Origin: Mytilus edulis
Lineage: Eukaryota
Reading direction: 5' to 3'
Length of the DNA stretch: 64,000 nt
NCBI RefSeq assembly: GCF_963676685.1
Contig: NC_092349.1
Location: 18,042,001 to 18,106,000 of the forward strand
Shown: one piece after another, positions 30,001 to 44,645 of the stretch
Numbering within the stretch: the stretch's first letter is position 1
Layout of the letters: every line of letters starts with the position of its first letter
Program-made: the position numbers and the translations under genes
Notes under the pieces: model-generated
What the model saw: only the letters and a program-made list of their open reading frames with translations
The model's database searches: none
What the model was told of the DNA's origin: nothing

Positions 30001-32169
30001 CATAAGTTCTTATGTCCTAACTACAATCCTGTTCCCTTTACACAAATGTGACCTATGGAATATGACTTTTTTGTAATAACATGAGGAACACGACGGGTGC
30101 CACAAGTGGAGCAGGATCTGCTTACACTTCCAGAGCACCTGAGATCCCCCCTGTCTCTGGTGGGGTTCGTGTTGCTTAGCCTTAATTTTCTATGTTGTGT
30201 CTTGTGTACTATTGTTTGTCTTTTTTAGCGATGGCATTTGAATGTTTGAATGTCATGAATGTCTCTCTGATATCCTTTTCCCCTCTTCTTTAACAATGAC
30301 TGGAGAAAGTTAAAACATCATAATAACACCAAGTTATCAAAATGCATTCATAAAACCTAAAAGGTTTTATTTGTACTTGAATTTCTTGTCTCCAACTTGT
30401 CCAAGTCAGAATTTTCTCTCCAATAAAAATTTGCACAAGTTGATGTTTCCCCATATTTTATTTTATTCTCTCCTTTGAAAAATATTTAAAATTGGTAAAT
30501 CAATAACATGAACTCCTCTAGAAAATTTCCCTCTTTACATTTAAAATTGTGCTAAGCTATCTTATGTGTTCATCATACATGTACATTACACCTATTTTTC
30601 AATACTAACATGACTAATACGACACTAAGAGCAGTCAGAAATGAGAAAAAAACACTTACCTTGTGAAAATTGAATTGAATTTACTTCTTCCAAGGACCAT
30701 GACTGTGTTAGATCAATATCTGGGAAAACAAGTGATACCCTCTCATCTTTTGTTTGTGACAATTTTAGGTATGTTCTGATGTTCAAGCTACACGCTATGG
30801 CAGACTAAAATAAAGCAAAAACTTATCATTGTCATGATTATTATTCAGTCGAAAATCATAGTCAATGGGTCTGACATACTGAAAAATATTAGACAATGCT
30901 CTCATACATGTATCAATGCAGTAACAATAATTGCTCATTTAGTCAATCAACATTAATTCCAAATATAATTCTAATGCAACATCATTTGTAATGTTCAATT
31001 TGATTGAAATAATGTTATTTATTTTCATTTGTGAACGAGATACATGTATTGCTCTTTTCCCCTCCTTAAAACAGTTTTAGGCTTGACAAAAACAAGTTTA
31101 ATATACATCTCCTCAAACTTTGTGATGTCCCACATAACTTTTCCTCAGTCATTCATGTGACATCGCTGATAATGCCTGCTCTCATCTCAAACCCTCTGGA
31201 CTCTTCTTCTTTCTATACTGGGCAGGTAATTATCACACAATCAGACTATGTACAGTTAAAATCAAAATCATGTGAGTCATGTTAAAAACAAGTTGGTCCT
31301 TAGAAGCTGTATGTGCTGATTCTCTCCTTGAAGGAATCAGCTGTCAGGACTTTGGGATTGAGTGTTTTAAGCTCTGGATTTCGGGATTGACCCTTTCAGG
31401 ATCCAGGAATTCTTTTTTTTCGAATTTCAGCATGTCAGGATTTAAATGTATTTAAATTCTGGATCTCTGGAATTCGGGATCAGGACCCCATCTAACACCC
31501 ACCCCCTCCCCCCTAAATACATGTAGTCACAGGAAGGTGTCAAAGCAAAAATTTAAAATAGCCCTCTAACCTAGACTTCATAATTGTGTCCCAGAAAATA
31601 AAAACAAATTATAGCCTTGCCAGACGTTATAATTATTACAAATGGTCAATATAAATTATCCGTGTTTCTTTTCCAATGTTGACGGAAGTGATCCAGGAAG
31701 TACCGAAGTATGTCACGTGGTAATTCGGCATACCGTAAACAAGTTCCGAGGACAGCATAAAATAATAATTTATTTATATATATACGAATGCATTTATATA
31801 TAAGATTGGTACTTTTTTATTGTTATCATATCTAAAATGCTTAATTTATAAAAATGTCCGAAATTCCCCGTTGTCCGATTTTCCCCATCTTTACCCTAGC
31901 TGCGGCCATGCTCTAGCTGCGGAACCGTAGCTCTTAGGTCCTTATGTTATTTTTTGACTATTTGCAGACCTATGGTCCGCAAATAGTCAAAAAAATAACA
32001 TAAGGACCTAAGAGCTACGGTTCCGCAGCTAGCCATGCTCTAACTCAAATAAATAATTTATAAAAATAAACAGATGAATGGATTTCAAATTCGTTACCCG
32101 GCCATAGACAACTGAATGTTCTCCATGTAAAATTATCTTTCCCGGTGCAGATACTATAATTTCTGTCAT
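24022..32169 (-). CDS. MVK: Mevalonate kinase (390 aa, 9 coding exons)
   Basis: Exons 32169-32098, 30804-30660, 29549-29408, 28464-28220, 27964-27919, 27090-27000, 25715-25593, 25220-25067, 24176-24022; all GT-AG with matching phases, 1173 nt. Motifs SAPGKIILHGEHSVVYG, LPIGAGLGSSA (GHMP), HGTPSGIDN, KLTGAGGGG. Confidence 0.97.
26509..26709. mobile_element. TA-flanked MITE (Tc1/mariner-like)
   Basis: TIR ctgtaaaccaacttattttcgcg / cgcgaaaataagttggtttacag with TA on both sides. Confidence 0.75.
26791..26986. mobile_element. TA-flanked MITE family (ctgtggattcatt ... aatgaatccacag)
   Basis: Terminal inverted repeats; related copies near 26144-26356, 41530-41716 and 62915-63126. Confidence 0.65.
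29900..30290 (+). mobile_element. Degenerate 3' fragment of a Penelope-like retroelement in MVK intron 2
   Basis: Translates to KLKSSLRKFYRRHYELVDRYGI, resembling the post-RT region of such elements; a related sequence lies in reverse near 8975-9165. Confidence 0.5.
31683..31720. promoter_or_regulatory. Cluster of ETS-like (GGAAGT) sites and an E-box in MVK intron 1
   Basis: CGGAAGTG 31683, AGGAAGTA 31695, GTCACGTGG with CACGTG at 31714-31719, in a CpG-containing patch within AT-rich DNA. Confidence 0.4.
31914..32031. mobile_element. 118-bp near-perfect palindromic MITE with 9-bp TSD
   Basis: Arms tagctgcggaaccgtagctcttaggtccttatgttatttttt(t)gactatttgc; TSD gccatgctc at 31905-31913 and 32032-32040. 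Confidence 0.85.
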
Positions 32170-32315
32170 CTTTGAACCATGTTTATCATCTAACAATTTC
32201 TTTCTGTTTCACGTGGTTTTGTTTGTTTTTAATTTGCGGTACTCTCAAAGCAAGGGGAGGGAAGCAACAGTTTTGTTGGCTGAATGCATTTCCTGTAAAA
32301 CAGAGTCAAAACAGA
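32170..32315. promoter_or_regulatory. Candidate bidirectional promoter region shared by MVK and MMAB, with an E-box (TCACGTGG)
   Basis: 146 bp separate the divergent ATGs (32169 minus, 32316 plus); CACGTG at 32210-32215. Confidence 0.7.
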
Positions 32316-35300
32316 ATGTCAAAATTTGTGTCCTCAATGTTAAGATTTACATCTACTGTTACAAAAACTGTTGTTACTAGATCATTGTAAGTATGTCCAG
32401 AAATATGTACTCAGATATAGATATGCAAATGGTTTGTTTTAGGTTCATGTGGATTTTTTGGCGAAAAATGGCTGTGTTTATGTAAGCTCTCGAGATGTTT
32501 CGGCCTTATGTCGTTTCGGCCATTCATGAATCCATGACAACTCGCCCCTCTTTTTCAACAAGTCGCCTTTATGTTCAAAAACTATCACAAATCGCCCTCT
32601 TTTTTACCAACTCGCCCTACTGTCTAAAAAATTAACCCAACTGGTATGAACTGTATATGGAAGAAGAAGAAGAAGAAGAACTCTTGTTTTATCCAACTGG
32701 CCCCACTTATGAACAGGGTTTAACCGTTAAATCCCATTGAAAATAGGTCTGACAAATTGCCCCACTTACATGCTATACTAAGTTAGTATTAGACTGTCCT
32801 TGTACTTATGAAAAAGGATGCATTCTTGTCGAATATAGGTCTGCCAACTCATTGCACTTATGAGTTAAATGAATACTTATGAAAACCTTAGAATTTTTTT
32901 TGCATTTTGATTTTTTTCTCTGCCTCATAGGTAGTTACGGCCCTGGTAGTGGCCATTAAGTTTTACCCTTGTCTGTCTATAAATCCCTTGTACCGTCCCC
33001 CCTCTCTACTTCCATCCATCAGTATGTCCTAAAGTTGGTTTTCGTTCTCTAACTTCAGTTTGCCTTTACCAAATGTTATGAATGTTATACACAATGCTGA
33101 GGGAGGTTAGGAGGGTTCCTGATCCCAAAATCCCAAGCTTAAAAATACAAAATCCTGAGGTCCTGAATTCAAATAAATTTCAATCCCAACATCCCGAAAA
33201 AACATTAAAAAAATTTTAAAAAACCAATTCCCGGATCCCAAAAGGATCAATCCTGGAAGGGTCAATTCTGAAATCCAGAGCTTAAAAACACGCGATCCAG
33301 GAGTCCCGATAAAGGTCCTATCCCCCCTCAATGCTTATTACTACAGAACACAGATCAAGTTTGAATTTTGCAGGGGTTAAAAAATCCACTAGCCCGACGC
33401 CCGGGACTACAGCATTTAGGCCTCGGGCAACCAAAACTTGTAACCCAATATGCCCGACGGACTAGTAACAAAAAATTCTTGGCGTTTCCAAAATAGAAAG
33501 TGGAATATCCCCTCATCACTATTCTATCTTAGCCAATCAGATTCGACTACGTCATCCCGGATTCCCAGAATTTGAACTGATTTTGTACAAGTTTTAGAAT
33601 AGAACAAATAACTCGGGGTGGATCCCGTACTTTCAATATCGATTTGTCAGTACAGGGGGTTGTACATTGCTTATGCAACCAGAGAAATATAATGTAACCG
33701 GATTGTACCTCCTTTTGAATAATTTATTGCACTATAAATGTGAATCCCTTTTGACAGCAGAAACCTGACTTTTGTCAGATATAAATTTGTAACATGTGCA
33801 CATGTTATGGACGCTATTTTGTTTTGTTTACAAACTGTGAAGAAGCCTCCAGAACCATGACCTAAACATTAACAGTCTTCAGAAAACTTAAACTTGATGC
33901 AATAATATTTTATCAATCATGATTATCTTCACTGATTTAATGAATTCGATTTTTAAAGAAATGAAATTTATAACAAACACAATTTCAGTTATGAGACTGT
34001 GCTCAGTTTGTAATCTATTTATAGCCCACAATTAGCTTACCTATGATAAATGTAAATATGGATATTATTGTACTTCGTTTATAAAACAATTACAAAAGAC
34101 ACAAACTATGAATGGTGATATTTACATGTATCCAGATAAATATTTGAGGTCATCTGATTTATTTTAATAAATAGAATTTTTAAACTGAAAACAAATATGA
34201 GCATTACATATAACCAGCTTATAATTCTTTTACACAAACGTGATGATGTATCTGATAAAAATCACTCCAATCTTTTTATACATGTATAACCATGTATATA
34301 TATAGCAGTGGTCAAGACTTGTACCATCTCGGGATTTGTTCAACTCATTATTACAGAATAGTAAATAAATATTCAATTGTCGATTAATTGAATATATTTG
34401 ATAATGGGATAGTTTTTTGCTGACAAAAGTTTTGGGCATCCAATTTGCAAAAATCTACTGTACAATGGATAAAAATTGTTAAGTTTATAGAATTCATTTA
34501 ATTGTAGCAAACTCTGAATTTGTAAGGCATACTCGGGTTAGCAGGTCAGTTTTGTTGGGCTACTAGTTCTTCCATCAGGGCTAGTAAAATCCTGATACCA
34601 ATTAGCCCTGGGCTAGTGAGCTATAACAAAATTTTTTAACCCCTGATTTTGGTGATGTCACTTTAACCGTTCTAGAGTTATGCCTCTTTAGGCCAACTAA
34701 AATTAATTAGTAGATTTTCATCCAAATTTTTGAAAAAAATTGGGCGGGTGGGAGGATTTTATTTTTTAAATTTTATTTCTTATGAAACCCTCGTCACGAG
34801 TTCTTCATACCCCGGGGTATATGCTAGTGGAAAGCAAGCTTGTATAATGTACATGCTGTATAAGGAATTCTACACTATTTTTTAAACTCTTAAATAAAAA
34901 TCCCTGATTGGCAACTACTGTTATACATGTAATTGCCGCTTTAGAAACCTATGTATAGTATATACATCAAAAAGAAGAGAAATGCTCTCTTCAGTTGGGT
35001 TATACCTACACCAAATTTTTTTTGCTTTCTAAGCAATGGTTTGTAGTCCCTATAAAATCAATAAAATGTATTGGTATAATTGTATGCAACACAAGTATTA
35101 TGAGTACAGAATAAAATGTAAACTCAGTGTTGAAAGTAATTATGATGTAAAACATGAATTTAACCAAAAAGTAGTTGTTGTTTAATGACTAAATTGAGGG
35201 TATTGGGACAGTTACAGAGGGTGTTTGCTGTTTGTCAACAAAAACAACAGACAAGGGCTTGTTATAATTAAAATGCGTGTTTGTCGACTTTTTTTCTCCT

Positions 35301-38300
35301 CAATATACGGTCATACATCAAACAAGTTCGTGCTTGTGTCAATTTGTTTAATCAAGTCATGTTTTTTGAACCAATTTGTTCTACGATTCTTGGGCTTTGG
35401 ATATATCATTCACAGTCCAAATTTCCTAACACAAAGTCATTGTATAAATAAAAAAAACAACAACACGGTTTTCGATTCACTTTATGTGACTACCGCAATT
35501 TGCGATCAAGGACAAGGCGTTTTACTTGTATATCAAATATTTTATGCCCTTCTCGTTATCAATCTCTATTCTCGATAGACGATGTTGTCATCATAGAGCA
35601 GCAGCATATGTCGACTTAATCATTTTCGTTAGATTACTCGAAGAAACACAAAAACGAAATTTGAAACAGGAAGTTTTGAATGAAACGAAATTATCGAAGG
35701 TTCCCGGTAACGGACATGAACAAAATCCGGAAATCGTATTTTTATTAAATAAAAAAAATCGGGGCGGGACGATTTCAGAGGGGCGGGCGGGGATGAAAAT
35801 CTAGCAATTAATTTTAATTGGCCTTATATAAAAAAAAAAAAAAAGCTGAATTATTTGTTTATGTTTTCTAACTGTAGTTTGCCTCAAGGAATTGCTATGA
35901 AACTCATATACACAATGCTTATTTTCTTAAAATACAGATCATGCCTCAACCAAATGCCAAATGCCATAAAAACTTGTTCACAACATTTTTTTTTTTTGCA
36001 CAATGCATGCTTACCACAAAATACAGAAGTTTGAATTTTGAGTTACATGTATCACTAAATTTTCTAGAGTTATGCCCCTTTACAAACGGAAAAATTGCTG
36101 AATTTTTAGTTTCTGTTCTCTAAATTAATTTTGTATCAAACAAATTTTATAAAACTTATATGTTATATACAATTATACTTATTAACACAAAACTCAGAAC
36201 AAATTTGGATACAAGGCCACTTTTGCTGTTCTAATCTGTTTTTACAGGTTATTCATTCCCTTAATAGATGATCATGGGTCACAAATCATTGTTTAATTCA
36301 TTAATTCAAATAGATAGGTCAATCACAATTTGATTTAATAGAAGAAATTTCATATACTGTATTTCAGCAACACAATTCGCAATTTTACCAAATGTTTTAC
36401 GATGTAAACTTAAATGACAAAAAGATAAAACATGTTAAAACCATGATAAAGTTTTTAAAAATCATCTTTCCATTTGTAATCGTCATTTCACTTGTAACCT
36501 GTAATAAATTTTAAATTAAAAAATATAAGCAAGCCCATTGCTTTACATTATATAGACTAAGTACATACCTTTTCATCATGTTCATAGACCAAGCTAAATA
36601 TAATTTCACTAATTTATTTATCGTGAAATTTTATCCTGATTAATAGAAAATAAGGTAAGTGAAAAACAGTTACATTTTTGAAGTGCGTTGTTTTCAGATT
36701 ATGAGATACATGTATGAGTAGGTAGACATATTGTAACATCACTGCAGTAATGGAGGAATCGGAGTACGAGGACATATTCAACTATACAAATTTCCAAGAA
36801 TATCGTATTGGCTTAACAGAGAATCAAAAAAGAAAGATAAGAAACAGAGTGAGAGATTTTATGGTGAAAAATGGACAACTCTATTATATAAAAGATACAC
36901 CTGACGAAAGACTAGTGATTACAAAAGACAAAAAGGACAGCATAATTAAATTATGTCATGTTGGAACTGGTCCTAGTCATTTAGGTAGAAACAAGACAAT
37001 TAGCAAGATATCTGACAGCTATTATTGGTTAGGTATTGTTAAAGATGTTACCGATTTTGTGAAAACATGTCTGCAATGTCAAAACGAAAACAAAAAGACC
37101 ACAAAGACTTGTCATGCTTGTCACTGTCAGGAAATAATGCCTGAACATGTGACTATCAAAAGAGAATGGAATGACGATGGGATAGATTTGATTAGTCCAT
37201 TTCTTCAGAGTGACGAAATATCATTATCTTCTGGTGGTTTTAAGTAAGTAATATGAAAACTTCATACTGTAAATTAAGAAATAATTGTGTGCATCAGTTA
37301 TTGTGATTTTTGCAGAATGGACAAAAATGCCAGATTAATTACTGTAACATATGTAATGTCAGAAATTATTACGTGCATTTATTAATATTGGGGTTTTCTC
37401 ATTTAAGGTGGTACCTAACACTTTCACTAAAATCAATTTGGCTCGTTTAATTTTCATAAAATTTTGACAAAGTATTTACTTTGACCCTTTGACAAAAATA
37501 TAAAAATTTCAAAAAATTTGAAACAACCATTTTATCAGAAAAATTACACTTGTTATATAGCAGTTTGACAAACACTAATTTTGATCATTGAGAAGCTTAA
37601 TATTCCCTTAAAAACACAACGTCATTAAAACATTTAGGTGATTTTACAGAGTTATCTCCCTGTAGTGTTAGGTACCACCTTAAGACTTAAATGTGATTTT
37701 AATTTTTATGATTTTTAGAAAAATCATGTTTTATTCATATATAAAATATTTCAATATGAAAGGTAAAATTATTGTGTTTACAACTCTGTCGCATTTTTCG
37801 CAATAATAAAAATCTCGCGATAATTTCTGAAATTACAGTATTACAATTTGTGGAAAAACTGCATACCGATATAATTATTATACTGTGAGATATCGTCATG
37901 ATCAGAATGCGATTTCTTATTGTTGTGATTCTCACCCATTTGCATTATTAACATTTACAATAATAAAAACCCACAATAATTTCTGAATTTACAGTACACA
38001 AAAGCTGTGATGCAACAAAAATATCACTGAAAACTCCAAAAGTCTTAAATATTGGCATAAATAATTTGTGCAAAGTGATAACATGTATATGTATATGGTG
38101 CACAGCATTTATATATATGCATTTTATATAAAATATTTTACAGCTGAATAGCATTTATCTTTTGGTGTGAAATATTTAATATCTATTTAATTCATGAAAG
38201 TTCTCATTTGATATAATATATAAAGAGAAAAGTAACAATTTCACTATGTTATTCTAGAATACAGCATCCTTAAAATGAAAATCTATAGTTACCGCCCACT

Positions 38301-41300
38301 GAGATCAAATGGCTAATGACACTATAAATGTCACTGTGTGGGCCATATTAAGTGTTTGTTAATTTTATCATCTGCCATGTCTGCAGGGCCAAATAAAAGT
38401 GCACAGCAAAATAATGTTTAATTAGTTTTTAATAATAAATGATATGCATTTTAAATTTATTAACCTACATGTAGGTCAAGCAGACTCATGCTATGCCTTC
38501 AAACTATTGCTAATGCCCAGGTTTGTCTGTACTCAGAGTACAAATTTGAGGTGTAAAACACAGCCATTTTAGCCATAGGCTAAGGTCCACATGAACCATA
38601 TTATTACATACATTGTGTATATATACATGTACATATGCATAGATAAAAATACAATGGTACATGTACACCACATATATATAGTGATACAGCAAGATTTCAA
38701 ATCTCATAACTATGCTATTGTGTATTATATAATTTCGTTTTTTCAGTTCCTCAGATGCACCAAAGATAAAAATACCAAAGATTTATACAAAAACTGGGGA
38801 TAAAGGTATGCACACTATGTACACTATAATATAACAGCTTTATATTCTTTATTTATTAAAAAAATTCATTATTATTTATATATAACCATGCATGATAATA
38901 TTGAATTTCATGAACTACAATGGTCACAGCTGTTACTATTTCAAAATCCTTTACAAATGATCTTTTTTTCAGTGAATTAAGTGTACATCATACCACATCT
39001 TCATATATCTATTGTTACAACTTTATATATGATGAAAGTTTTTAATTACCTTGACTGACTATACAGCTCTTACACAGTCGACTCTGGCTTGCACCTTTAG
39101 GAGCATTTAGATAATTTTAATTTTTACCATAAAGTTTATAGTTTAGAATGATAAATAAGAAAAAAACCTTTTATCAATAAAAGTAATTGTGAATAAAAAT
39201 TTATATGCGCTATAGACACAGCTATATATATTGTATGCTACAGGGGTTGAAGTCATAAAACTTTGCTCAGTGCTTGGAGCACAAAAATCTTGCTCGAAAC
39301 ATGAAATCCAGCATTTTGATTGGTTGATTTTTTAGTACGAGAACAAAAAACTGACTCGAAAGTTTTATGACCGCAAGGCCTGGTCTTTAACATTTAAATC
39401 TTTTTTCTTTTTTTTCAGGAACATCTGCTTTATACACTGGTGAGAGGAGATCTAAAGATGATATGATATTCAGTGCCTTGGGCACTACAGATGAATTGTC
39501 ATCAGCAATAGGGTATGAACAGAAACAAAATATAGTATAAAATGTTTTTACAAAAATACAAAAAAATCTAAGGTAAATTCAGAACCGAAGAAAAACTTAT
39601 ACTGTTTATTTATAAATATTCATTGATTTTGTGGGTACAGGGGAACAACAAATTGAAACTTAAAAAAATAAAAATTATCTAAAGGAATGTATGTAGACTT
39701 GGCCAAAATAACAAAATTAGATATCCAAGAAAATGCAAATTTCCCTTAATCAATGAAAATTGCTACTCATATAATTAATAAATGCAGATTAATGATTAGG
39801 TAATATGTAACACCAAATGATGATTGATATGGAAAAACTGTCATATAAATCCTGTTTTGGATTTTTTCCCCTCTAAAAAAATAGAAAATATTGTTGGTTG
39901 AAACTATAACCTTGTTTTATAGCTAGCTAAACATCCCACTCATATGACAGTGGTTTATAGTTTCGCTTAAGTGACAAAATTGCATGAGCATGTTAGAGTA
40001 TGTCCAATATGTGAAAATGTGTTTGTAGGATTGCAGCAGAATATTGTACAGAATCCAGTATACCAGTCACAGACAGGTTACATGAGGTATTATCAGAAAT
40101 TATCATCACATAAAAAAAATGTATTTCGTGCAAATGTATACCATGTCTACTATTAAGGAGGGGTGAAATAAACAGATGGACATTTGAAGATTGCAAATAA
40201 ACTGACAAAGCCATGGCTAGAAAATAAAAAGACAAGCAGACAAATAATAGTACACAAGCCACAACATAGCTTATAGTGAACTAAAGACTAAGCAACACAA
40301 ATCCCACCAAAAAACTAGCTGTAATAAAAAGTTGATGGCTCATATTTTTCATGCTTTTAGTTTATTTAACAATTAATCTATAGTATTTGATTTAAGAAAT
40401 GGAGATGTGGTTTGATTGAGACAACTATCAACCAGAGTTTAAATTATGTAAAAGTTGGCAAATATAGATCACCTTACAGTTGTCTTTGTTTATGTAATTT
40501 ATACATGTTTCTCGTTCCTCTTTTTAGACCGTTGGTTTTCCTGTTTGAATGGTTTTACACTAGTCATTTTGGGGTCCTTTATAGCTTGTTGTTCGGTGTG
40601 AGCCAAGGCTCCATGTTGAAGGCCATACATTGACCTATAATGGTTTACTTTTTTTTAAATTGTTATTTGGATGGAGAGTTGTCTCATTGGCACTAACACC
40701 ACATCTTCCTATATCTATTTAACAATGAGAAAAAAAACCTCCTGCATAGCAAGCTATTAAAGACCCTGACATGCCAAATAAAAACCAATTCAAAGAAGAA
40801 AAACAACAGCCTGATATATCTTAAATTTATGATTAATTTTATCTAACTTTTTACAGATCTTTTGGACCTAGTAAGGCTTAGGGTTTTGTAAGGATCTAAA
40901 TTTTGACAGACGTAATGTGTCTCAAGGTAGTTGGGGTTGTGTAAAGCGTCACTTTAATTATTTGAACTTTGACCTAATTTTGTTTTTGTTATACTTAACT
41001 GTATTCATATGAGTTTTATTTTACAGGTACAATGTGCCTTACAAGATTTAGGGTCCTGTATAGCTACACCTTATTCATCTGCAAGAGAAGCCCATCTTAG
41101 TAAGTTAAGTAAATAAGATATGTACCTTGTACAACTCATAACTTTTTGAATTGACAGTTTCATGTTATCAACAATATTTCATAAAACAATGTAAACAATT
41201 ATATCAACATTTATGCTCTGAATGACTCTCTTGACTTGATTATATATAATTCACATTACTGTAAATTCAGAAATTATTGCGATTTTTTCATTCTAGACTA

Positions 41301-44300
41301 AAATGCAATTATAATTTTTGCAATATTGGGAAAAATCCTGTTAAATTTATATAAAAAAAAAGCAGATGTAAACAACATAAATGCTTGATCACTGTTTAAT
41401 TTACTGCTATGTTAAAACGCACTAATGACTTTAAATACATTTGTAAAAGTTGTCTCCCATATACCAGGTCTACCCCCTTAAGTATGATAAAAACGTGTCT
41501 AGGTAAGGTCAAATGCAGATTATAACATTCTGTGGATTCATTATTATTCATGGAATATCAATTTTGGTGGATTTCCCTGGTGAAGGAGAACCACAAATTC
41601 AAATGTTCAACGGTTTACAAGTGTTCTATAGGCTTGTATGCGGACTTTGGCAAAACCAGGAAATTATCAATGAAAATACAATGTTTACTAAATCCAGGAA
41701 ATAAATGAATCCACAGTTGCATACATAAAATTTGGCTTAGTGTGACCACATGCTACCAGTGTCAGTAACTTCTTGACTGGCATTTATGAAATAAATATTC
41801 ACAACAGTTAAAATGATTTATATAAATTACAAGCTTAATTCTGTAGTTGTGTTAGCAATAATTAATATTGGTTATTTTTTCCAGGAAAGACCACCTTTAG
41901 TGATAAATATGTGGCAGATTTAGAAAATTGGATTGATGAATACACTGCAGAGTTACCTCCTCTTACTAATTTTATCTTGCCAGTAAGTTTTTACTTCTGT
42001 TAAACTTTATACTATTACTATGCTTATCTTAACTTTATATAATAAGAATTTAAAAATATGGGAACACAGATGTAAGACAACAATTCAAAAACCTAATTAT
42101 CATGAATTTATTTATTTTTGTGGGTACCAATTTTCGTATTTTCAGAAAGACTCGATTTTTTGTTAATAATTGACACCATGTATCATTGGTACAGCGGATA
42201 TAGCTGTATAGGTTTTTCGAAGTGGGAAAAGCTATATTCCGTACACACATTTAACTATTTACCATTCAGAAGGATTTATGTGATCAGCTATACAGCGTAT
42301 ACAAGGCTTCTTTTGAGAAATAAAATATCGATAAATAACATATATGTATGAAAGATTTCAATGCCAATTATTGAAACAGCTATACATATTACGCACACAC
42401 AGTGGCCTTCTATCAGAAAAAAGAGTTGCAATGAATAAAGAATCATATGGGATGAGACAAGCATCAACTTCTTTGACAAGTATTTGCACATGTTTTAAGT
42501 AAGCGTTCTTGATTTAGGAAAAAATTCAGACTTCTCTAATCATCAACCTACAACCAAATCATTTCTTAAAACAACAATTATCTTTACATTGTAGTAAACA
42601 TTGATATTGTGTAAACAAAACAAAGATTTTCATACCGTGTCAGAAGAAAAATTGATCATGACCGCTTGGTTATTAGTTCCTATATCCACTGTACCGATGA
42701 TACATGGTGATTAATTTCATGGTTTTACCAATGTCTGCACACAAGCCTACAGGACATTAGTGATACTTTAAACATATAAATTCAGGATTCTCTTGGAATA
42801 CAATTAAAGAATAGAGAATAATTGGAAAACAAACTAAGAATAGAGAAATATGGCCTTAAACAAGAATAATGCACAGCCATCCACCACTGAAATCTCTTAG
42901 CATTACAATAGACATTTTTTGTAGCTTGAAAGATCTCAGAAAACTATATGTCAAAAAGTAAGATCTTGAGTAAATCTTTCAGTACTAGGGAAAAAGGATA
43001 ATTGAGTTATCTTTCTTGGAACTGTATTTGTTTTTGATTTTTTTTTGTACATTCTGATATTATTATGATTGTAGTCAGGAGGAAAGTCAGCCACACATAT
43101 GCACCTAGCAAGATCTATCTGTAGGCGAGCTGAAAGAAGGTAAATTTCTCACTTAATAACTTAGAAATTCACACCTATAGGTCACAATGAGCAAAGTTAA
43201 TATGCTTGTTTAGTCTTGAAAAGTTTAATTTTTTTTTTCATCAACTCCATCTTTTAGAAATAGAAAATAAATTATAAACTTTGGAAGGGAGATTTGCTTT
43301 GAATATTTTTTCTGTATGTTTTGTTTTAAGTTAAATATTGAAACCAAAAGTCAAAAGAGTTATGACAAAATATCTGGTAATTTTTCAGGGTAATACTGTC
43401 AGTGTTTTCTATGTTTCAGATACTGTAAATTTATTCGAATTATTGCGTTTATTTATTATTATGAATTTTGAAAGGTCAAATATGGGATAATGATAAATGT
43501 TTATGCTTAGTGGGTCTTTTTTTTGCAGCTTGACACCATTAATTAGAGCTGAAGAAATTGGTCCTGAACCCTTAAAGTATTTAAACAGGTATTAATTGAT
43601 TTCCTAAGCTGGTATATAAGAATGTGGCTTTAAGTGTTTTAAACAACAATGCAGAGATAATACATGTAATATGAACAGTTTGTCAAACCAAAATAGCAAC
43701 ACATGAACATAAAACAAAAAGTATAAAAAAAAGACACATTCAATTTAAGTTGATGAAAAATGGACAGAATAAAAAAGGAACCACACTTTCCGGAAACAAG
43801 AGAAGTCATTTTCTATTAAAAGATCTATATACCGATATGCATAATTTTTCCCTCTAAGGGTCCATTATTCTTCTGTTAGATGATTCCTGTAACATAAATC
43901 AGCTGTTATCATTTTGTTTATTAGGATTCCAACCAGTCAGTTCCAAATAGTTATCAAAGGTACCAGGATTATAATTTAGTACACCAGACGCGCGTTTCAT
44001 CTTCATAAGACTCATCAGTGACACTCATATCAAAATATTTATAAAGCCAAACAAGTACAAAGTTGAAGAGCATTGAGCATTTCCAAAGGCTGATTCAGAA
44101 ATTTTTATAAGAGGGGACCAACTGACTGGCTTGACAGGGCTTGGGTCCTGCTTCAATTATTCCTTATATAATCAAACAAATCTTTTCCAGAAAAAGGGGA
44201 GGGGGTGGTTGCCCACCTCTAAATCAGCTTCTAAGTCTAAATCTGCAGTGTCTTTTTTGATAAAAATCTTGATTTAGCGATTTCATATCATTTCTCAATT

Positions 44301-44645
44301 TATGAATCTTTGAATGTTTTACATTATAATGGAAGATTGATTTTCTAAAGTAAGAATGCCTTTATCAAATCTTGATTTTGCTTTAATTTTGAAAGGCATG
44401 CATGAATACTGAATTTATTTATTGAAATATTTTTTTGCTGGAGTTTATTTTATTAACACATTGACTCCCCGAATTATCATGATTATCTGTGTGATATTTT
44501 ATGTCTCAATAATAGTATTTCTGTTATAAATGACTGTTCACCTTTCAGGTTAAGTGACTTTTTATTTACAACAGCCAGATATGCTGCTATGAAGGAAGGA
44601 AGAGAAGAAATTATTTACAGAAGAATACATGCAGATGAAAAATAG
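32316..44645 (+). CDS. MMAB: Corrinoid (cob(I)alamin) adenosyltransferase, mitochondrial (224 aa, 9 coding exons)
   Basis: Exons 32316-32386, 38747-38805, 39419-39512, 40029-40086, 41027-41099, 41885-41982, 43075-43139, 43529-43588, 44549-44645; 675 nt with matching phases. Presequence-like [26 protein letters not shown]; PduO-type motifs [64 protein letters not shown] at 44715-44720. Confidence 0.97.
33371..34645. mobile_element. Non-autonomous DNA transposon (hAT-like termini) in MMAB intron 1
   Basis: TIR caggggttaaaaaat / attttttaacccctg; attttg on both flanks; subterminal gcccgac/gggctagt motifs. Confidence 0.65.
34689..35826. mobile_element. Non-autonomous DNA transposon with about 35-bp imperfect TIRs
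   Basis: aggccaactaaaattaattagtagattttcatcc versus ggatgaaaatctagcaattaattttaattggcct. Confidence 0.6.
36750..37247 (+). CDS. Gypsy/GIN1-like integrase N-terminal zinc-binding (H2C2) ORF/exon nested in MMAB intron 1; candidate alternative coding exon of MMAB
   Basis: 165-aa intact ORF with [15 protein letters not shown]...[21 protein letters not shown] and only the first motif of the integrase core (W...GIDLISPF). Acceptor ttttcag ends at 36697; donor gtaagt at 37244-37249 (phase 2). Confidence 0.8.
   Translation: MEESEYEDIFNYTNFQEYRIGLTENQKRKIRNRVRDFMVKNGQLYYIKDTPDERLVITKDKKDSIIKLCHVGTGPSHLGRNKTISKISDSYYWLGIVKDVTDFVKTCLQCQNENKKTTKTCHACHCQEIMPEHVTIKREWNDDGIDLISPFLQSDEISLSSGGFK
37407..37679. 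mobile_element. 273-bp TTAA-flanked MITE (Kolobok-like)
   Basis: TTAA-ggtggtacctaacact ... agtgttaggtaccacc-TTAA. Confidence 0.8.
43945..44080 (-). repeat. Copy of the family A hammerhead-bearing repeat, reverse orientation, in MMAB intron 8
   Basis: Reverse complement reads GUGUCA-CUGAUGA-GUCUuaugaAGAU-GAAA-CGCGCG-UC-UGGUGU; flanks match 1130-1260. Confidence 0.7.

What the first reader, a model, noticed from the sequence alone, without database searches (positions are those of the whole stretch)
36698..38805. Integrase zinc-finger exon in MMAB intron 1 splices in frame to MMAB exon 2: predicted transposon-derived, non-mitochondrial B12 adenosyltransferase chimera
Seen: a stop-free 165-aa gypsy/GIN-type integrase N-terminal region (H2C2 motif) lies in the sense orientation in MMAB intron 1. 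I saw no RT, no complete DDE core and no LTR/TIR around it. It is bounded by an acceptor (ttttcag|36698) and a consensus donor (AA|gtaagt, 37244) overlapping its own stop codon. The donor is phase 2, the phase MMAB exon 2 (38747) requires, giving ...[25 protein letters not shown]... and a 365-aa protein with the whole catalytic domain. Established: MMAB exon 1 encodes the mitochondrial presequence, PduO-type adenosyltransferases are trimers, and integrase H2C2 domains bind Zn and aid multimerisation. Inference: a domesticated integrase exon may replace the presequence and make a cytosolic or nuclear adenosyltransferase isoform. I know of no description of such an isoform. A chance phase match has 1-in-3 odds, so transcript evidence is needed.
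Basis: partly seen in the sequence, partly recalled or inferred. Interest (0 to 1): 0.9.

Follow-up and report, generated by a model that had tools for sequence, protein, structure and literature searches.

The report
Integrase exon spliced into mussel MMAB
In Mytilus mussels, the first exon of an old transposon integrase gene sitting in intron 1 of the vitamin-B12 enzyme gene MMAB is spliced in frame to the rest of MMAB, giving a second mRNA whose protein swaps the mitochondrial address tag for a zinc-finger module; the mRNA is real and already in RefSeq, but nobody seems to have described it or tested the protein.

Summary
Window 36698..37243 is a 546-nt cassette exon. RNA-like contigs from two independent studies join 37243 to 38747 (GT..AG) and start the exon exactly at 36698.

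The predicted 365-aa chimera is already public. It is RefSeq "MMAB-like isoform X1" in M. edulis (first 164 residues identical to the window ORF), M. galloprovincialis, M. trossulus and M. californianus, with ENA models in M. coruscus. The canonical presequence form is isoform X2. I found no paper describing it.

New here:
- The donor "overlapping its own stop" is a native intron donor of an intron-bearing, stand-alone Ginger/GIN-type integrase family. The acceptor also recurs upstream of other copies.
- The exon encodes a confidently folded integrase N-terminal module (residues 1-115) plus a fast-evolving tail.
- With the exon included, MMAB's own ATG gives only a 25-codon uORF.
- Evidence for coding constraint is moderate: 6 of 9 variants are synonymous, and the only indels are in frame.

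Translation, location and function are untested. This is a new member of a known kind, host-transposase fusion by exon capture. Earlier scan notes for this stretch were only first-reader notes on this same window.

The parts
32029..32169 (-). Mevalonate kinase (MVK) first coding exon, head-to-head with MMAB (context)
Evidence: The ORF listing shows ...MTEIIVSAPGKIILHGEHSVVYG on the minus strand.
32316..32386 (+). MMAB exon 1, coding part: ATG plus a 23-codon basic presequence, donor TT|GTAAGT, phase 2
   Evidence: Sequence. 100% tblastn match to residues 1-23 of RefSeq isoform X2, and net charge +4 over the first 24 residues.
36600..36697 (+). Transposon-derived stretch upstream of the cassette, carrying the polypyrimidine tract and the CAG acceptor
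   Evidence: 36643..36699 aligns at 75% to L016, upstream of that copy's integrase exon. Four more genomic matches at 70-82% cover about 36600..36749. No RNA depth was seen here.
36698..37243 (+). Cassette exon of MMAB (546 nt = 3 x 182, phase 2 at both ends), derived from the first coding exon of a Ginger/GIN-type integrase gene
   Evidence: X1 contig record 5 lies on exactly 36698..37243 with 30-nt overhangs. X4 records 9 and 10 do the same. Raw stranded RNA covers it only in the orientation of the MMAB exons. It is single-copy in the genome.
36698..36749 (+). Non-coding leader of the cassette. The MMAB exon-1 frame ends here, at TGA 36702-36704 with a second in-frame stop TAG at 36723-36725, giving a 25-codon uORF
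   Evidence: Frame analysis. A 17-nt allelic insertion at 36719, not a multiple of 3, is tolerated here.
36750..37094 (+). Integrase start codon plus N-terminal extension and HHCC zinc-binding domain (residues 1-115)
   Evidence: Pfam Integrase_H2C2 over residues 58-115. AlphaFold pLDDT is about 90 over residues 1-115. Fold matches: PFV integrase 4bac_A Z 10.2, Ty3 integrase 7q5b_A Z 8.5, MoMLV integrase N-terminal domain 3nnq_A Z 6.2. About 10% amino-acid divergence between M. edulis and M. californianus. H70 and H77 are nearly invariant in the family.
37095..37243 (+). Tail (residues 116-164 plus 2 nt): linker and stub of the integrase catalytic core (...GIDLISPF...), fast-evolving and probably disordered
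   Evidence: About 27% amino-acid divergence and two of the three in-frame indels: the 5-codon HACHC difference and the GMS allele. pLDDT below 50 over 117-152. Relatives continue here into the rve domain.
37244..37249 (+). Donor GTAAGT (the TAA 'stop' at 37245-37247 is intronic), native to the integrase family
   Evidence: Joint 37243->38747 with GT..AG ends. Paralogue L002 has the same AAGTAAGTAATAT after GYK, and its next exon lies about 640 nt downstream. L013 and L006 have a gap at the same point.
37265..37996 (.). Nested repeats in the intron behind the donor: an element with 47-nt imperfect inverted ends (37265..37996) holding a MITE (37403..37683) with perfect 20-nt inverted ends that finish in TTAA
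   Evidence: Inverted repeats I1 and I4. Very high summed RNA depth, and reads from other copies break off at 37403, 37683 and 37996.
38747..38805 (+). MMAB exon 2 (...[20 protein letters not shown]), acceptor ttttcag|T, start of the adenosyltransferase domain
   Evidence: Sequence. Joints 37243->38747 and 38805->39419. tblastn of isoforms X1 and X2.
39419..39512 (+). MMAB exon 3
   Evidence: Joints 38803->39417 (cut +2) and 39511->40028 (cut +1), seen in contigs and in raw reads. 100% tblastn match. PF01923 match.
40029..44645 (+). Remaining MMAB coding exons. Exon 4 starts at 40029. Further exons lie at about 41024-41161, 41887-41982, 43075-43137, 43527-43589 and 44547-44642 plus the stop
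   Evidence: tblastn of RefSeq isoforms X1 and X2 on the window. PF01923 matches.

Best explanation
**What it is.** Window 36698..37243 is a genuine, alternatively included cassette exon of the mussel MMAB gene. It began as the first coding exon of an intron-bearing, stand-alone Ginger/GIN-type integrase (transposase) gene. That gene landed in sense orientation in MMAB intron 1 before the living Mytilus species split.

**How it arose.** The exon arrived with its own acceptor, its own start codon (36750) and its own phase-2 donor (37243|37244). The rest of the integrase is gone. MMAB intron 1 is also phase 2, so the integrase donor pairs in frame with the MMAB exon 2 acceptor.

**What the mRNA encodes.**
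- MMAB's own ATG now opens only a 25-codon uORF that ends at 36702.
- The long ORF starts at the integrase ATG and encodes 365 aa: an integrase N-terminal extension plus HHCC zinc module (1-115), a flexible tail and linker of about 60 aa, and the complete PduO-type adenosyltransferase domain.
- There is no mitochondrial presequence.

**Shown.** The exon borders, the junction to exon 2, the strand, substantial inclusion, presence in five species, the transposon origin of the donor (firm) and of the acceptor (probable), and the fold of the N-terminal module.

**Inferred.**
- The upstream partner is MMAB exon 1.
- The protein is translated, by reinitiation or leaky scanning.
- It is kept by relaxed purifying selection.
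- It stays outside the mitochondrial matrix. Its N-terminus has net charge -6, followed by a basic KRKIRNRVR patch.

The zinc module most plausibly adds a binding or oligomerisation surface to the trimeric enzyme. What it is used for is unknown.

**How sure.** The stated confidence of 0.6 is for the whole statement, including translation and selection. For the shown part alone (a real cassette exon of transposon origin, spliced in frame to MMAB) I would say 0.95.
For: **Splicing and expression**
- Joint 37243->38747 (GT..AG) in contigs of X1 and X4, which come from two studies.
- A 606-nt contig made of 30 nt + the exon + 30 nt.
- Zero depth in the unique intron bins.
- Same-strand raw reads in X21.
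- Contig depth ratio of cassette to exons 2-3 is about 0.35 (X1) and 0.75-0.83 (X4).
- Fourteen RNA-like runs from eight studies hold about 0.30 of the words, which equals the cassette plus exon 2.

**Public models**
- RefSeq isoform X1 is 365 aa in M. edulis, M. galloprovincialis and M. trossulus, and 361 aa in M. californianus. ENA has models in M. edulis and M. coruscus.
- Isoform X2 is the canonical form.
- The window ORF is identical to P0159 over residues 1-164.
- Pfam finds Integrase_H2C2 plus a complete Cob_adeno_trans domain in the product.

**Origin**
- Single copy in the genome.
- Relatives align from their own residue 1 and carry H2C2 + rve, and one also carries Peptidase_C48. These are the Ginger1 features given in PMC2836005.
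- Native donor and a shared acceptor stretch.

**Coding constraint**
- 7 of 9 variants are at third codon positions (P = 0.008). 6 of 9 are synonymous (P = 0.002-0.011). pN/pS is 0.12.
- All three indels inside the ORF are multiples of 3, while the 17-nt indel lies just before the ATG.
- The HHCC ligands and the first 21 residues are conserved.
- pLDDT is about 90 for residues 1-115, with an integrase NED+NTD fold at Z 10.2.

**N-terminus**
- Net charge is -6, against +4 for the presequence.
Against: - No raw read in the sampled 6% of X21 or 18% of X24 crossed 37243->38747. At a depth near 3 about two were expected, so this is weak evidence.
- X1 and X4 are only guessed to be RNA. Their GT..AG joints and empty introns argue that they are.
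- The upstream partner of 36698 was never read. Only a 30-nt overhang is seen, and no joint inside 35000..40999 was listed for it.
- With exon 1 upstream, the main ORF sits behind a uORF and several short ATGs, with only 45 nt to reinitiate. The uORF stop is also a premature stop in NMD terms.
- The integrase part evolves about four times faster than the enzyme part (15% against 4% between M. edulis and M. californianus), similar to the presequence at 4 of 24.
- An open frame at that divergence still has a 0.14-0.22 probability under neutrality.
- No animal enzyme outside mitochondria is known to use adenosylcobalamin (textbook knowledge), so a cytosolic isoform has no obvious client.
- RefSeq models in sister species may not be independent of one another.
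Confidence: 0.6

Rival explanations
1. Regulated unproductive splicing. The cassette acts as a poison exon. Including it ends the MMAB reading frame after 25 codons, so it lowers output of the mitochondrial enzyme through NMD or uORF repression. The long integrase-MMAB ORF is rarely or never translated.
For: - The exon-1 frame meets TGA at 36702 and TAG at 36723, far upstream of later junctions.
- Only 45 nt separate the uORF stop from the ATG at 36750, and short ATGs lie in between.
- Inclusion differs between runs, from about 0.35 to about 0.8, as expected of a regulated switch.
Against: - A poison exon needs no open frame. Here 165 codons stay open in five species and in several alleles.
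- Indels inside the ORF are all in frame, while a 17-nt indel sits just outside it.
- Variants are biased to synonymous sites.
- Steady-state inclusion of 35-80% is high for an efficiently degraded isoform.
Confidence: 0.2
2. Neutral by-product. The transposon exon is spliced in simply because it brought good splice sites. The chimeric mRNA, and perhaps some protein, is made but has no selected function. The frame is still open because the genus is young.
For: - P(no stop) under neutrality is still 0.14-0.22 at the divergence seen with M. californianus.
- The integrase part diverges about four times faster than the enzyme part, and the 116-164 tail differs by 27%.
- The architecture was found only in Mytilus.
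Against: - Synonymous and third-position bias (P about 0.002-0.011), three of three in-frame indels, conserved HHCC ligands and a fully conserved first 21 residues.
- Taken together these are unlikely under neutrality, although each is modest.
- The closest paralogue, L002, has already collected stops and a frameshift.
Confidence: 0.15
3. Same chimera, different 5' end. This is a variant of the best explanation, not exclusive with its other parts. Cassette transcripts start from a dedicated promoter or 5' exon and not from MMAB exon 1. The integrase ATG would then be the first good start codon and no uORF would be involved.
For: - M. edulis RefSeq lists two accessions (XP_071178717.1 and XP_071178718.1) for the same X1 protein, which suggests differing untranslated regions.
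- The upstream 30 nt of the contigs were never read.
Against: - Both contigs stop exactly 30 nt beyond 36698. In a k=31 assembly that indicates a branch at the upstream donor, meaning a donor shared with another acceptor, as expected for exon 1 (inference).
- There is no RNA depth on 36200..36697, and no joint inside 35000..40999 was listed for the overhang.
Confidence: 0.15
4. Artefact. The ORF is a dead transposon fragment with chance splice-like motifs, and the chimera is only an annotation error.
For: Some ENA models of this gene are clearly imperfect inside the catalytic domain.
Against: - Spliced contigs from two independent studies use exactly these sites.
- Raw stranded RNA covers the exon.
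- About 0.30 of the words are held by 14 RNA-like runs from 8 studies.
Confidence: 0.02

Closest known systems
Host-transposase fusion genes born by 'transposase capture' (Cosby et al., bioRxiv 10.1101/2020.05.07.082677; e.g. KRABINER)
   Same: A DNA-transposon coding exon sits in a host intron and is joined to host exons by alternative splicing, using splice sites the transposon brought. The parental transcript is kept alongside.
   Different: - In that study 8 of 9 traced cases use a transposon acceptor and put the transposase at the C-terminal side. The captured parts are mostly DNA-binding domains joined to regulatory domains such as KRAB, in tetrapods.
- Here the transposon supplies the start codon and a native donor as well as an acceptor.
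- The captured part is N-terminal and replaces a mitochondrial presequence.
- The host partner is a metabolic enzyme, and the host is a mollusc.
Ginger1 DNA transposons and their domesticated genes Gin-1/Gin-2 (Bao et al. 2010, PMC2836005)
   Same: - A stand-alone Gypsy-like integrase that begins with an N-terminal motif plus an H2C2 finger.
- Genes with GT-AG introns.
- Ginger1 occurs in a mollusc (Aplysia).
- One relative here carries the Ulp1 (Peptidase_C48) domain typical of Ginger1.
   Different: - Only the first coding exon survives. There is no DDE core beyond a short stub, no GPY/F motif, no inverted ends and no target-site duplication.
- It is not a separate gene but an exon of MMAB.
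Imagin, a Ginger1-derived integrase-like gene of malacostracan crustaceans (PMC12863088)
   Same: An invertebrate domestication of a Ginger-type integrase that keeps the H2C2 finger and has lost catalysis. It lies inside an intron of a gene of the same B12 pathway, MMUT, which is the enzyme MMAB serves.
   Different: - Imagin is a separate multi-exon gene on the opposite strand of MMUT. It keeps the inactive core and is over 400 million years old.
- The Mytilus exon is in sense, is spliced into the host mRNA, keeps only the N-terminal module, and was found only in one genus.
Canonical MMAB / PduO-type ATP:cob(I)alamin adenosyltransferase
   Same: Isoform X1 contains the whole Cob_adeno_trans domain (model positions 1-160 of 171, E 9e-37). 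From exon 2 onward it is identical to the canonical isoform X2.
   Different: It lacks the basic presequence encoded by exon 1 and carries 165 integrase-derived residues in its place.

Membership tests
Host-transposase fusion gene (transposase capture) | A transposon-derived coding exon inside a host gene, in sense | tested here: met
   The integrase H2C2 ORF lies in MMAB intron 1 on the + strand.
Host-transposase fusion gene (transposase capture) | Spliced in frame to host exons in RNA | tested here: met
   Joint 37243->38747 with GT..AG ends in contigs of two studies, phase 2 into exon 2.
Host-transposase fusion gene (transposase capture) | Splice site supplied by the transposon | tested here: met
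   The donor is shared with paralogue L002, whose next exon lies about 640 nt downstream. L013 and L006 show the same gap. The acceptor stretch recurs upstream of other copies, so it is probably native too.
Host-transposase fusion gene (transposase capture) | Fusion maintained by selection | tested here: inconclusive
   In favour: 6 of 9 variants synonymous, in-frame indels only, open frame in 5 species. Against: 15% amino-acid divergence compared with 4% in the enzyme part, and P(no stop) of 0.14-0.22 under neutrality. DNA of the other species was not available for dN/dS.
Host-transposase fusion gene (transposase capture) | A fusion protein is made | not testable with these tools
   No proteomic or ribosome-profiling data could be reached.
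Ginger1 / GIN-type integrase (PMC2836005) | H2C2 zinc finger preceded by a conserved N-terminal motif, at the start of a stand-alone protein | tested here: met
   Pfam E 2.3e-16. Relatives align from their own residue 1. Integrase NED+NTD fold at Z 10.2.
Ginger1 / GIN-type integrase (PMC2836005) | DDE catalytic core | tested here: not met
   Homology ends at 37254, and only the stub ...GIDLISPF... remains. There is no rve hit in the ORF or elsewhere in intron 1.
Ginger1 / GIN-type integrase (PMC2836005) | GPY/F motif and a C-terminal OTU or Ulp1 domain | tested here: not met
   Absent from the window. Present only in relatives, for example P0024 with Peptidase_C48.
Ginger1 / GIN-type integrase (PMC2836005) | Terminal inverted repeats and a 4-bp CCGG/CCGT target-site duplication | tested here: not met
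   No inverted repeat brackets the ORF. The repeats found belong to other small elements downstream. For a remnant this is expected, so 'derived from' stands but 'is an element' does not.
PduO-type adenosyltransferase (MMAB) | Complete Cob_adeno_trans domain | tested here: met
   PF01923 model positions 1-160 of 171, E 9.2e-37, in P0004. The exons are mapped in the window.
PduO-type adenosyltransferase (MMAB) | N-terminal mitochondrial presequence (animal MMAB) | tested here: not met
   Isoform X1 starts MEESEYED... with net charge -6 over 24 residues. Isoform X2 has the basic presequence at +4. Localisation itself was not tested.
PduO-type adenosyltransferase (MMAB) | Trimeric, catalytically active enzyme | not testable with these tools
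   The AlphaFold model of the enzyme part had low confidence because the alignment was shallow there. No complex job was run.
Poison exon (splicing coupled to NMD) | Inclusion puts a premature stop in the host reading frame | tested here: met
   The exon-1 frame stops at 36702-36704.
Poison exon (splicing coupled to NMD) | The isoform is degraded by NMD | not testable with these tools
   This needs NMD inhibition. Steady-state inclusion of 0.35-0.8 argues against efficient decay.

The most novel reading that the evidence does not exclude
The integrase-module/adenosyltransferase fusion is a translated, selected protein of the genus Mytilus. It places a cobalamin adenosyltransferase, or at least a cobalamin/ATP-binding trimer, outside the mitochondrial matrix, possibly in the nucleus via the KRKIRNRVR patch. 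The integrase N-terminal module would tether it to nucleic acid or to a partner. This would be the first host-transposase fusion in which the host part is a metabolic enzyme and the captured exon works by replacing a targeting signal. Together with Imagin in MMUT, it might hint at a non-random link between Ginger-type integrases and the B12/propionate pathway genes.
Probability: 0.3. Interest if true: 0.75.

Novelty: new member of a known kind. Interest (0 to 1): 0.55.

Why it matters
- It is a clean, datable invertebrate example of how a transposon exon that carries its own splice sites and start codon can give an old housekeeping enzyme a second N-terminus in one step.
- Here the new N-terminus replaces a mitochondrial address tag with a zinc-binding integrase module.
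- Both isoforms coexist, so the case is well suited to testing whether such fusions begin as regulated splicing noise or as working proteins.
- It also asks what an adenosylcobalamin-making enzyme could do outside mitochondria in an animal.
- The sequences are already in RefSeq under an uninformative name, so the value lies in recognising what isoform X1 is.

Tried and rejected
- **Rest of the integrase.** I looked for the rve core, GPY/F motif and reverse transcriptase in the window with seven family proteins and all paralogue ORFs. Nothing lies beyond 37254.
- **Recent multicopy element.** Rejected. There is one copy, and the next best is 60% identical at protein level (74% at DNA level) and broken.
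- **Donor created by the stop mutation.** I first thought TAA was a mutated Tyr codon, because relatives read K-Y-V there. I dropped this when L002 showed the same GTAAGT with its next exon downstream. The Y-V residues come from the next exon.
- **Alternative acceptor at 36747 (ctgcag|).** It would give a 496-nt exon, which is out of frame. No RNA evidence was seen for it.
- **Raw reads of the second organism (X21, X24).** They cover the exon on the right strand but gave no read across 37243->38747 in the sampled share. I do not count this for or against.
- **The same architecture outside Mytilus.** None was found among 1.84 billion representatives or in the length-matched search. Absence from annotation is not absence.
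- **Literature.** There is no paper on a Mytilus MMAB fusion. The 10-million-protein screen for transposon domains fused to host domains (PMC12062965) does not mention H2C2, adenosyltransferase or molluscs.
- **AlphaFold of the whole isoform.** The enzyme half is uninformative because the alignment is shallow there.
- I ran no complex prediction. I built and searched no joined exon model of my own. All joined proteins used are database entries returned by searches with the single exon.

Full report

Yes.
- The + strand has an ATG-to-stop ORF of 165 codons at 36750..37247.
- It matches Pfam Integrase_H2C2 over residues 58-115, almost the whole model, with E 2.3e-16.
- MMAB exon 2 starts at 38747 behind ttttcag|.
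- MMAB exon 1 is 32316..32386, with donor TT|GTAAGT. It sits head-to-head with mevalonate kinase exon 1 on the other strand.
- The cassette is 546 nt, exactly 182 codons.

**2. Is it spliced?**

The one run search listed 14 RNA-like runs from eight studies. Each holds about 0.30 of the words of 36698..38805, which is what the cassette (546 nt) plus exon 2 (59 nt) would give. I laid two of these contig sets (X1 and X4, from different studies) and two raw stranded RNA runs of a second organism label (X21 and X24) on 35000..40999.

- Both contig sets carry the joint 37243->38747 with GT..AG ends.
- In X1 one 606-nt contig lies on exactly 36698..37243, with 30 further letters at each end. X4 shows the same at the 5' side.
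- In a k=31 assembly this is how a cassette exon appears. Both ends stop at a branch, so the upstream donor and the exon 2 acceptor are each shared with another path.
- The unique intron bins (36200-36599 and 38000-38399) have no depth, and the next MMAB joints (38805->39419 and 39512->40029) are present. These contig sets therefore behave as cDNA.
- The raw reads cover the exon only in the orientation seen on the MMAB exons. They gave no read across the cassette donor in the 6% and 18% of the runs that were sampled. At a depth near 3 that is weak evidence either way.
- Contig depth ratios suggest inclusion of about 0.35 (X1) and 0.75-0.83 (X4). The tool warns that such depths are rough.

**3. 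It is already a public gene model.**

Searching the exon's protein alone found a 96%-identical Logan protein, P0001. Its 90% cluster also holds a 369-aa "MMAB [Mytilus edulis]" entry, P0004. That protein is the predicted chimera: Integrase_H2C2 plus a complete Cob_adeno_trans domain.

A second search drew words only from the integrase part of P0004. With the cluster listings, it showed the following:
- RefSeq "corrinoid adenosyltransferase MMAB-like isoform X1" of 365 aa in M. edulis, M. galloprovincialis and M. trossulus, and of 361 aa in M. californianus.
- ENA models in M. edulis and M. coruscus.
- "Isoform X2" of 224-226 aa, which is the canonical form with the presequence.

The window ORF is identical to M. 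edulis X1 over residues 1-164, so the window is probably M. edulis. I built and searched no joined model myself. All joined proteins are database entries returned by single-exon searches. I found no paper on this isoform.

**4. Where the exon came from.**

- It is single-copy. The next best place in the genome is 60% identical at protein level (74% at DNA level) and broken.
- DNA homology to that paralogue (L002) runs only from 36746 to 37254. No further integrase sequence is left in intron 1.
- The closest relatives in 1.84 billion representatives align from their own first residue. They are stand-alone integrases with H2C2 + rve, and one also has a Ulp1 protease domain. These are the features Bao et al. 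give for Ginger1 transposases, whose genes have 1-4 GT-AG introns and which occur in the mollusc Aplysia (PMC2836005).
- L002 ends its first exon with the same AAGTAAGTAATAT after "GYK". Its next exon (YVLTIVDY..., 95% identical to the M. galloprovincialis protein P0002) lies about 640 nt downstream. L013 and L006 have a gap at the same point, and P0007 and P0008 diverge right after "GYR".
- So the donor is the integrase gene's own intron donor, and the "stop" is the first intronic codon.
- The 57 nt ending in the acceptor (36643..36699) recur at 70-82% identity upstream of other family copies. The acceptor is therefore probably native too.
- The only luck was that MMAB intron 1 has the same phase.
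- This is the birth mechanism described for host-transposase fusions: insertion into a host gene, then splicing through transposon-supplied sites (bioRxiv 10.1101/2020.05.07.082677).
- Homology stops 10 nt behind the donor, perhaps because small repeats were inserted there. One element spans 37265..37996 and holds a nested MITE at 37403..37683.

**5. What the product looks like.**

- With an alignment of 30 family members, AlphaFold gives pLDDT of about 90 for residues 1-115 and below 50 for 117-152, although the alignment is just as deep there.
- The confident part matches the N-terminal extension plus HHCC domain of three integrases: prototype foamy virus (4bac_A, Z 10.2, 103 residues aligned), Ty3 (7q5b_A, Z 8.5) and MoMLV (3nnq_A, Z 6.2). 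These stand clear of the unrelated rows at Z 5.9 and below. By sequence the best solved relative is also Ty3.
- The enzyme half of the model is uninformative because the alignment holds only Mytilus sequences there.
- The new N-terminus has net charge -6 over 24 residues, against +4 for the presequence, and is followed by a basic KRKIRNRVR patch. Canonical import looks unlikely, and a nuclear signal is possible. Both points are inference.

**6. Is the frame under selection?**

- Between M. edulis and M. californianus the integrase part differs at 15.2% of residues. Residues 1-115 differ at about 10% and residues 116-164 at about 27%. The enzyme part differs at 4.0% and the presequence at 4 of 24 residues.
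- All three indels inside the ORF are multiples of three: one codon, five codons, and the GMS allele. A 17-nt indel allele lies at 36719, just before the ATG.
- Of the nine best-supported variants in the ORF, seven are at third codon positions (P = 0.008) and six are synonymous (P = 0.002-0.011, depending on transition bias). pN/pS is 0.12.
- Against this, a neutral simulation leaves the frame open in 14-22% of trials at the californianus divergence.
- I could not obtain the other species' DNA for a proper dN/dS.
- I read this as relaxed but real constraint on residues 1-115 and little on the tail.

**7. The uORF problem.**

The exon length is a multiple of three and both ends are phase 2, so the exon-1 frame enters the cassette in the integrase frame. 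It stops at TGA 36702, with TAG at 36723 behind it.

If exon 1 is the upstream partner, the MMAB ATG opens a 25-codon uORF. The chimera then needs reinitiation or leaky scanning to the ATG at 36750, which has G at -3 and G at +4. That exon 1 is the partner is inferred from two things: the 30-nt branch signature, and the fact that no joint inside 35000..40999 was listed for the overhang.

The same layout is what a poison exon looks like, so unproductive splicing is the main rival. The conserved open frame and the high steady-state inclusion argue against it but do not exclude it.

**8. Verdict.**

The thing is a host-transposase fusion isoform of MMAB, born by capture of a Ginger/GIN-type integrase first exon that arrived with its own splice sites. 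It was found in all five Mytilus species whose models turned up here.

It is a new member of a known kind. It is already present in RefSeq as "isoform X1" but apparently undescribed. Whether the protein is made, where it goes and what it does remain open.

One curiosity is that Imagin, a Ginger1-derived gene of crustaceans, lies in an intron of MMUT, the enzyme that MMAB serves (PMC12863088). This is probably chance, and I did not test it.

**9. Limits.**

- Read laying and the look-up of sequencing runs allow one call each, so neither the 5' overhang nor the third organism label (X19) could be examined.

Noticed in passing
window 32029-32386: MVK (minus strand) and MMAB (plus strand) first exons lie head-to-head, with 146 bp between their start codons.
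   Followed up: partly
window 37265-37996 (nested MITE 37403-37683): Two nested small repeats sit just behind the cassette donor. The inner one has perfect 20-nt inverted ends that finish in TTAA, and its summed RNA word depth reaches about 370,000 in X4. Reads from other copies break off exactly at 37403, 37683 and 37996.
   Followed up: partly
window 40400-40800: Another very abundant repeat lies inside an MMAB intron. Summed depth reaches about 150,000 in X4, with loose ends at 40524 and 40718.
   Followed up: no
window 36655-36697: AATAAG|GTAAGT ... TTTTCAG|AT looks like a 43-nt mini-intron of the transposon's leader. The stretch is conserved upstream of other family copies (L016 and four more places), but no RNA was seen on 36600-36697.
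   Followed up: partly
window 36719: The X4 contigs carry a 17-nt insertion allele in the non-coding leader of the cassette. Three close substitutions lie at 36729-36735.
   Followed up: no
window 37095-37110 (residues 116-120): The M. edulis complex has five extra codons (HACHC) directly behind the HHCC finger. They are absent in M. californianus, M. coruscus and the paralogue. They add two Cys and two His residues next to the zinc site.
   Followed up: no
L002 (G000:C7:26601204-26604545); L009-L012: The integrase family has intron-bearing members in this genome. L002 is a broken two-exon copy. L009-L012 are four places (on C12, C8, C6 and C4) that match the query almost identically and each carry three TAA stops, which suggests a more recent multicopy family.
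   Followed up: partly
P0004 (CAG2211821.1), P0155 / P0005 / P0167 (M. coruscus): The ENA gene models of this MMAB differ from RefSeq inside the catalytic domain, with extra or missing stretches. For example, a run in P0004 maps to 39971-40156 of the window. These are probably retained introns or mis-joined exons in those annotations.
   Followed up: no
literature: PMC12863088: Imagin, a domesticated Ginger1 integrase of crustaceans, is nested in an intron of MMUT on the opposite strand. MMUT is the partner enzyme of MMAB. This gives two Ginger-type captures in genes of one pathway, which is probably coincidence.
   Followed up: no
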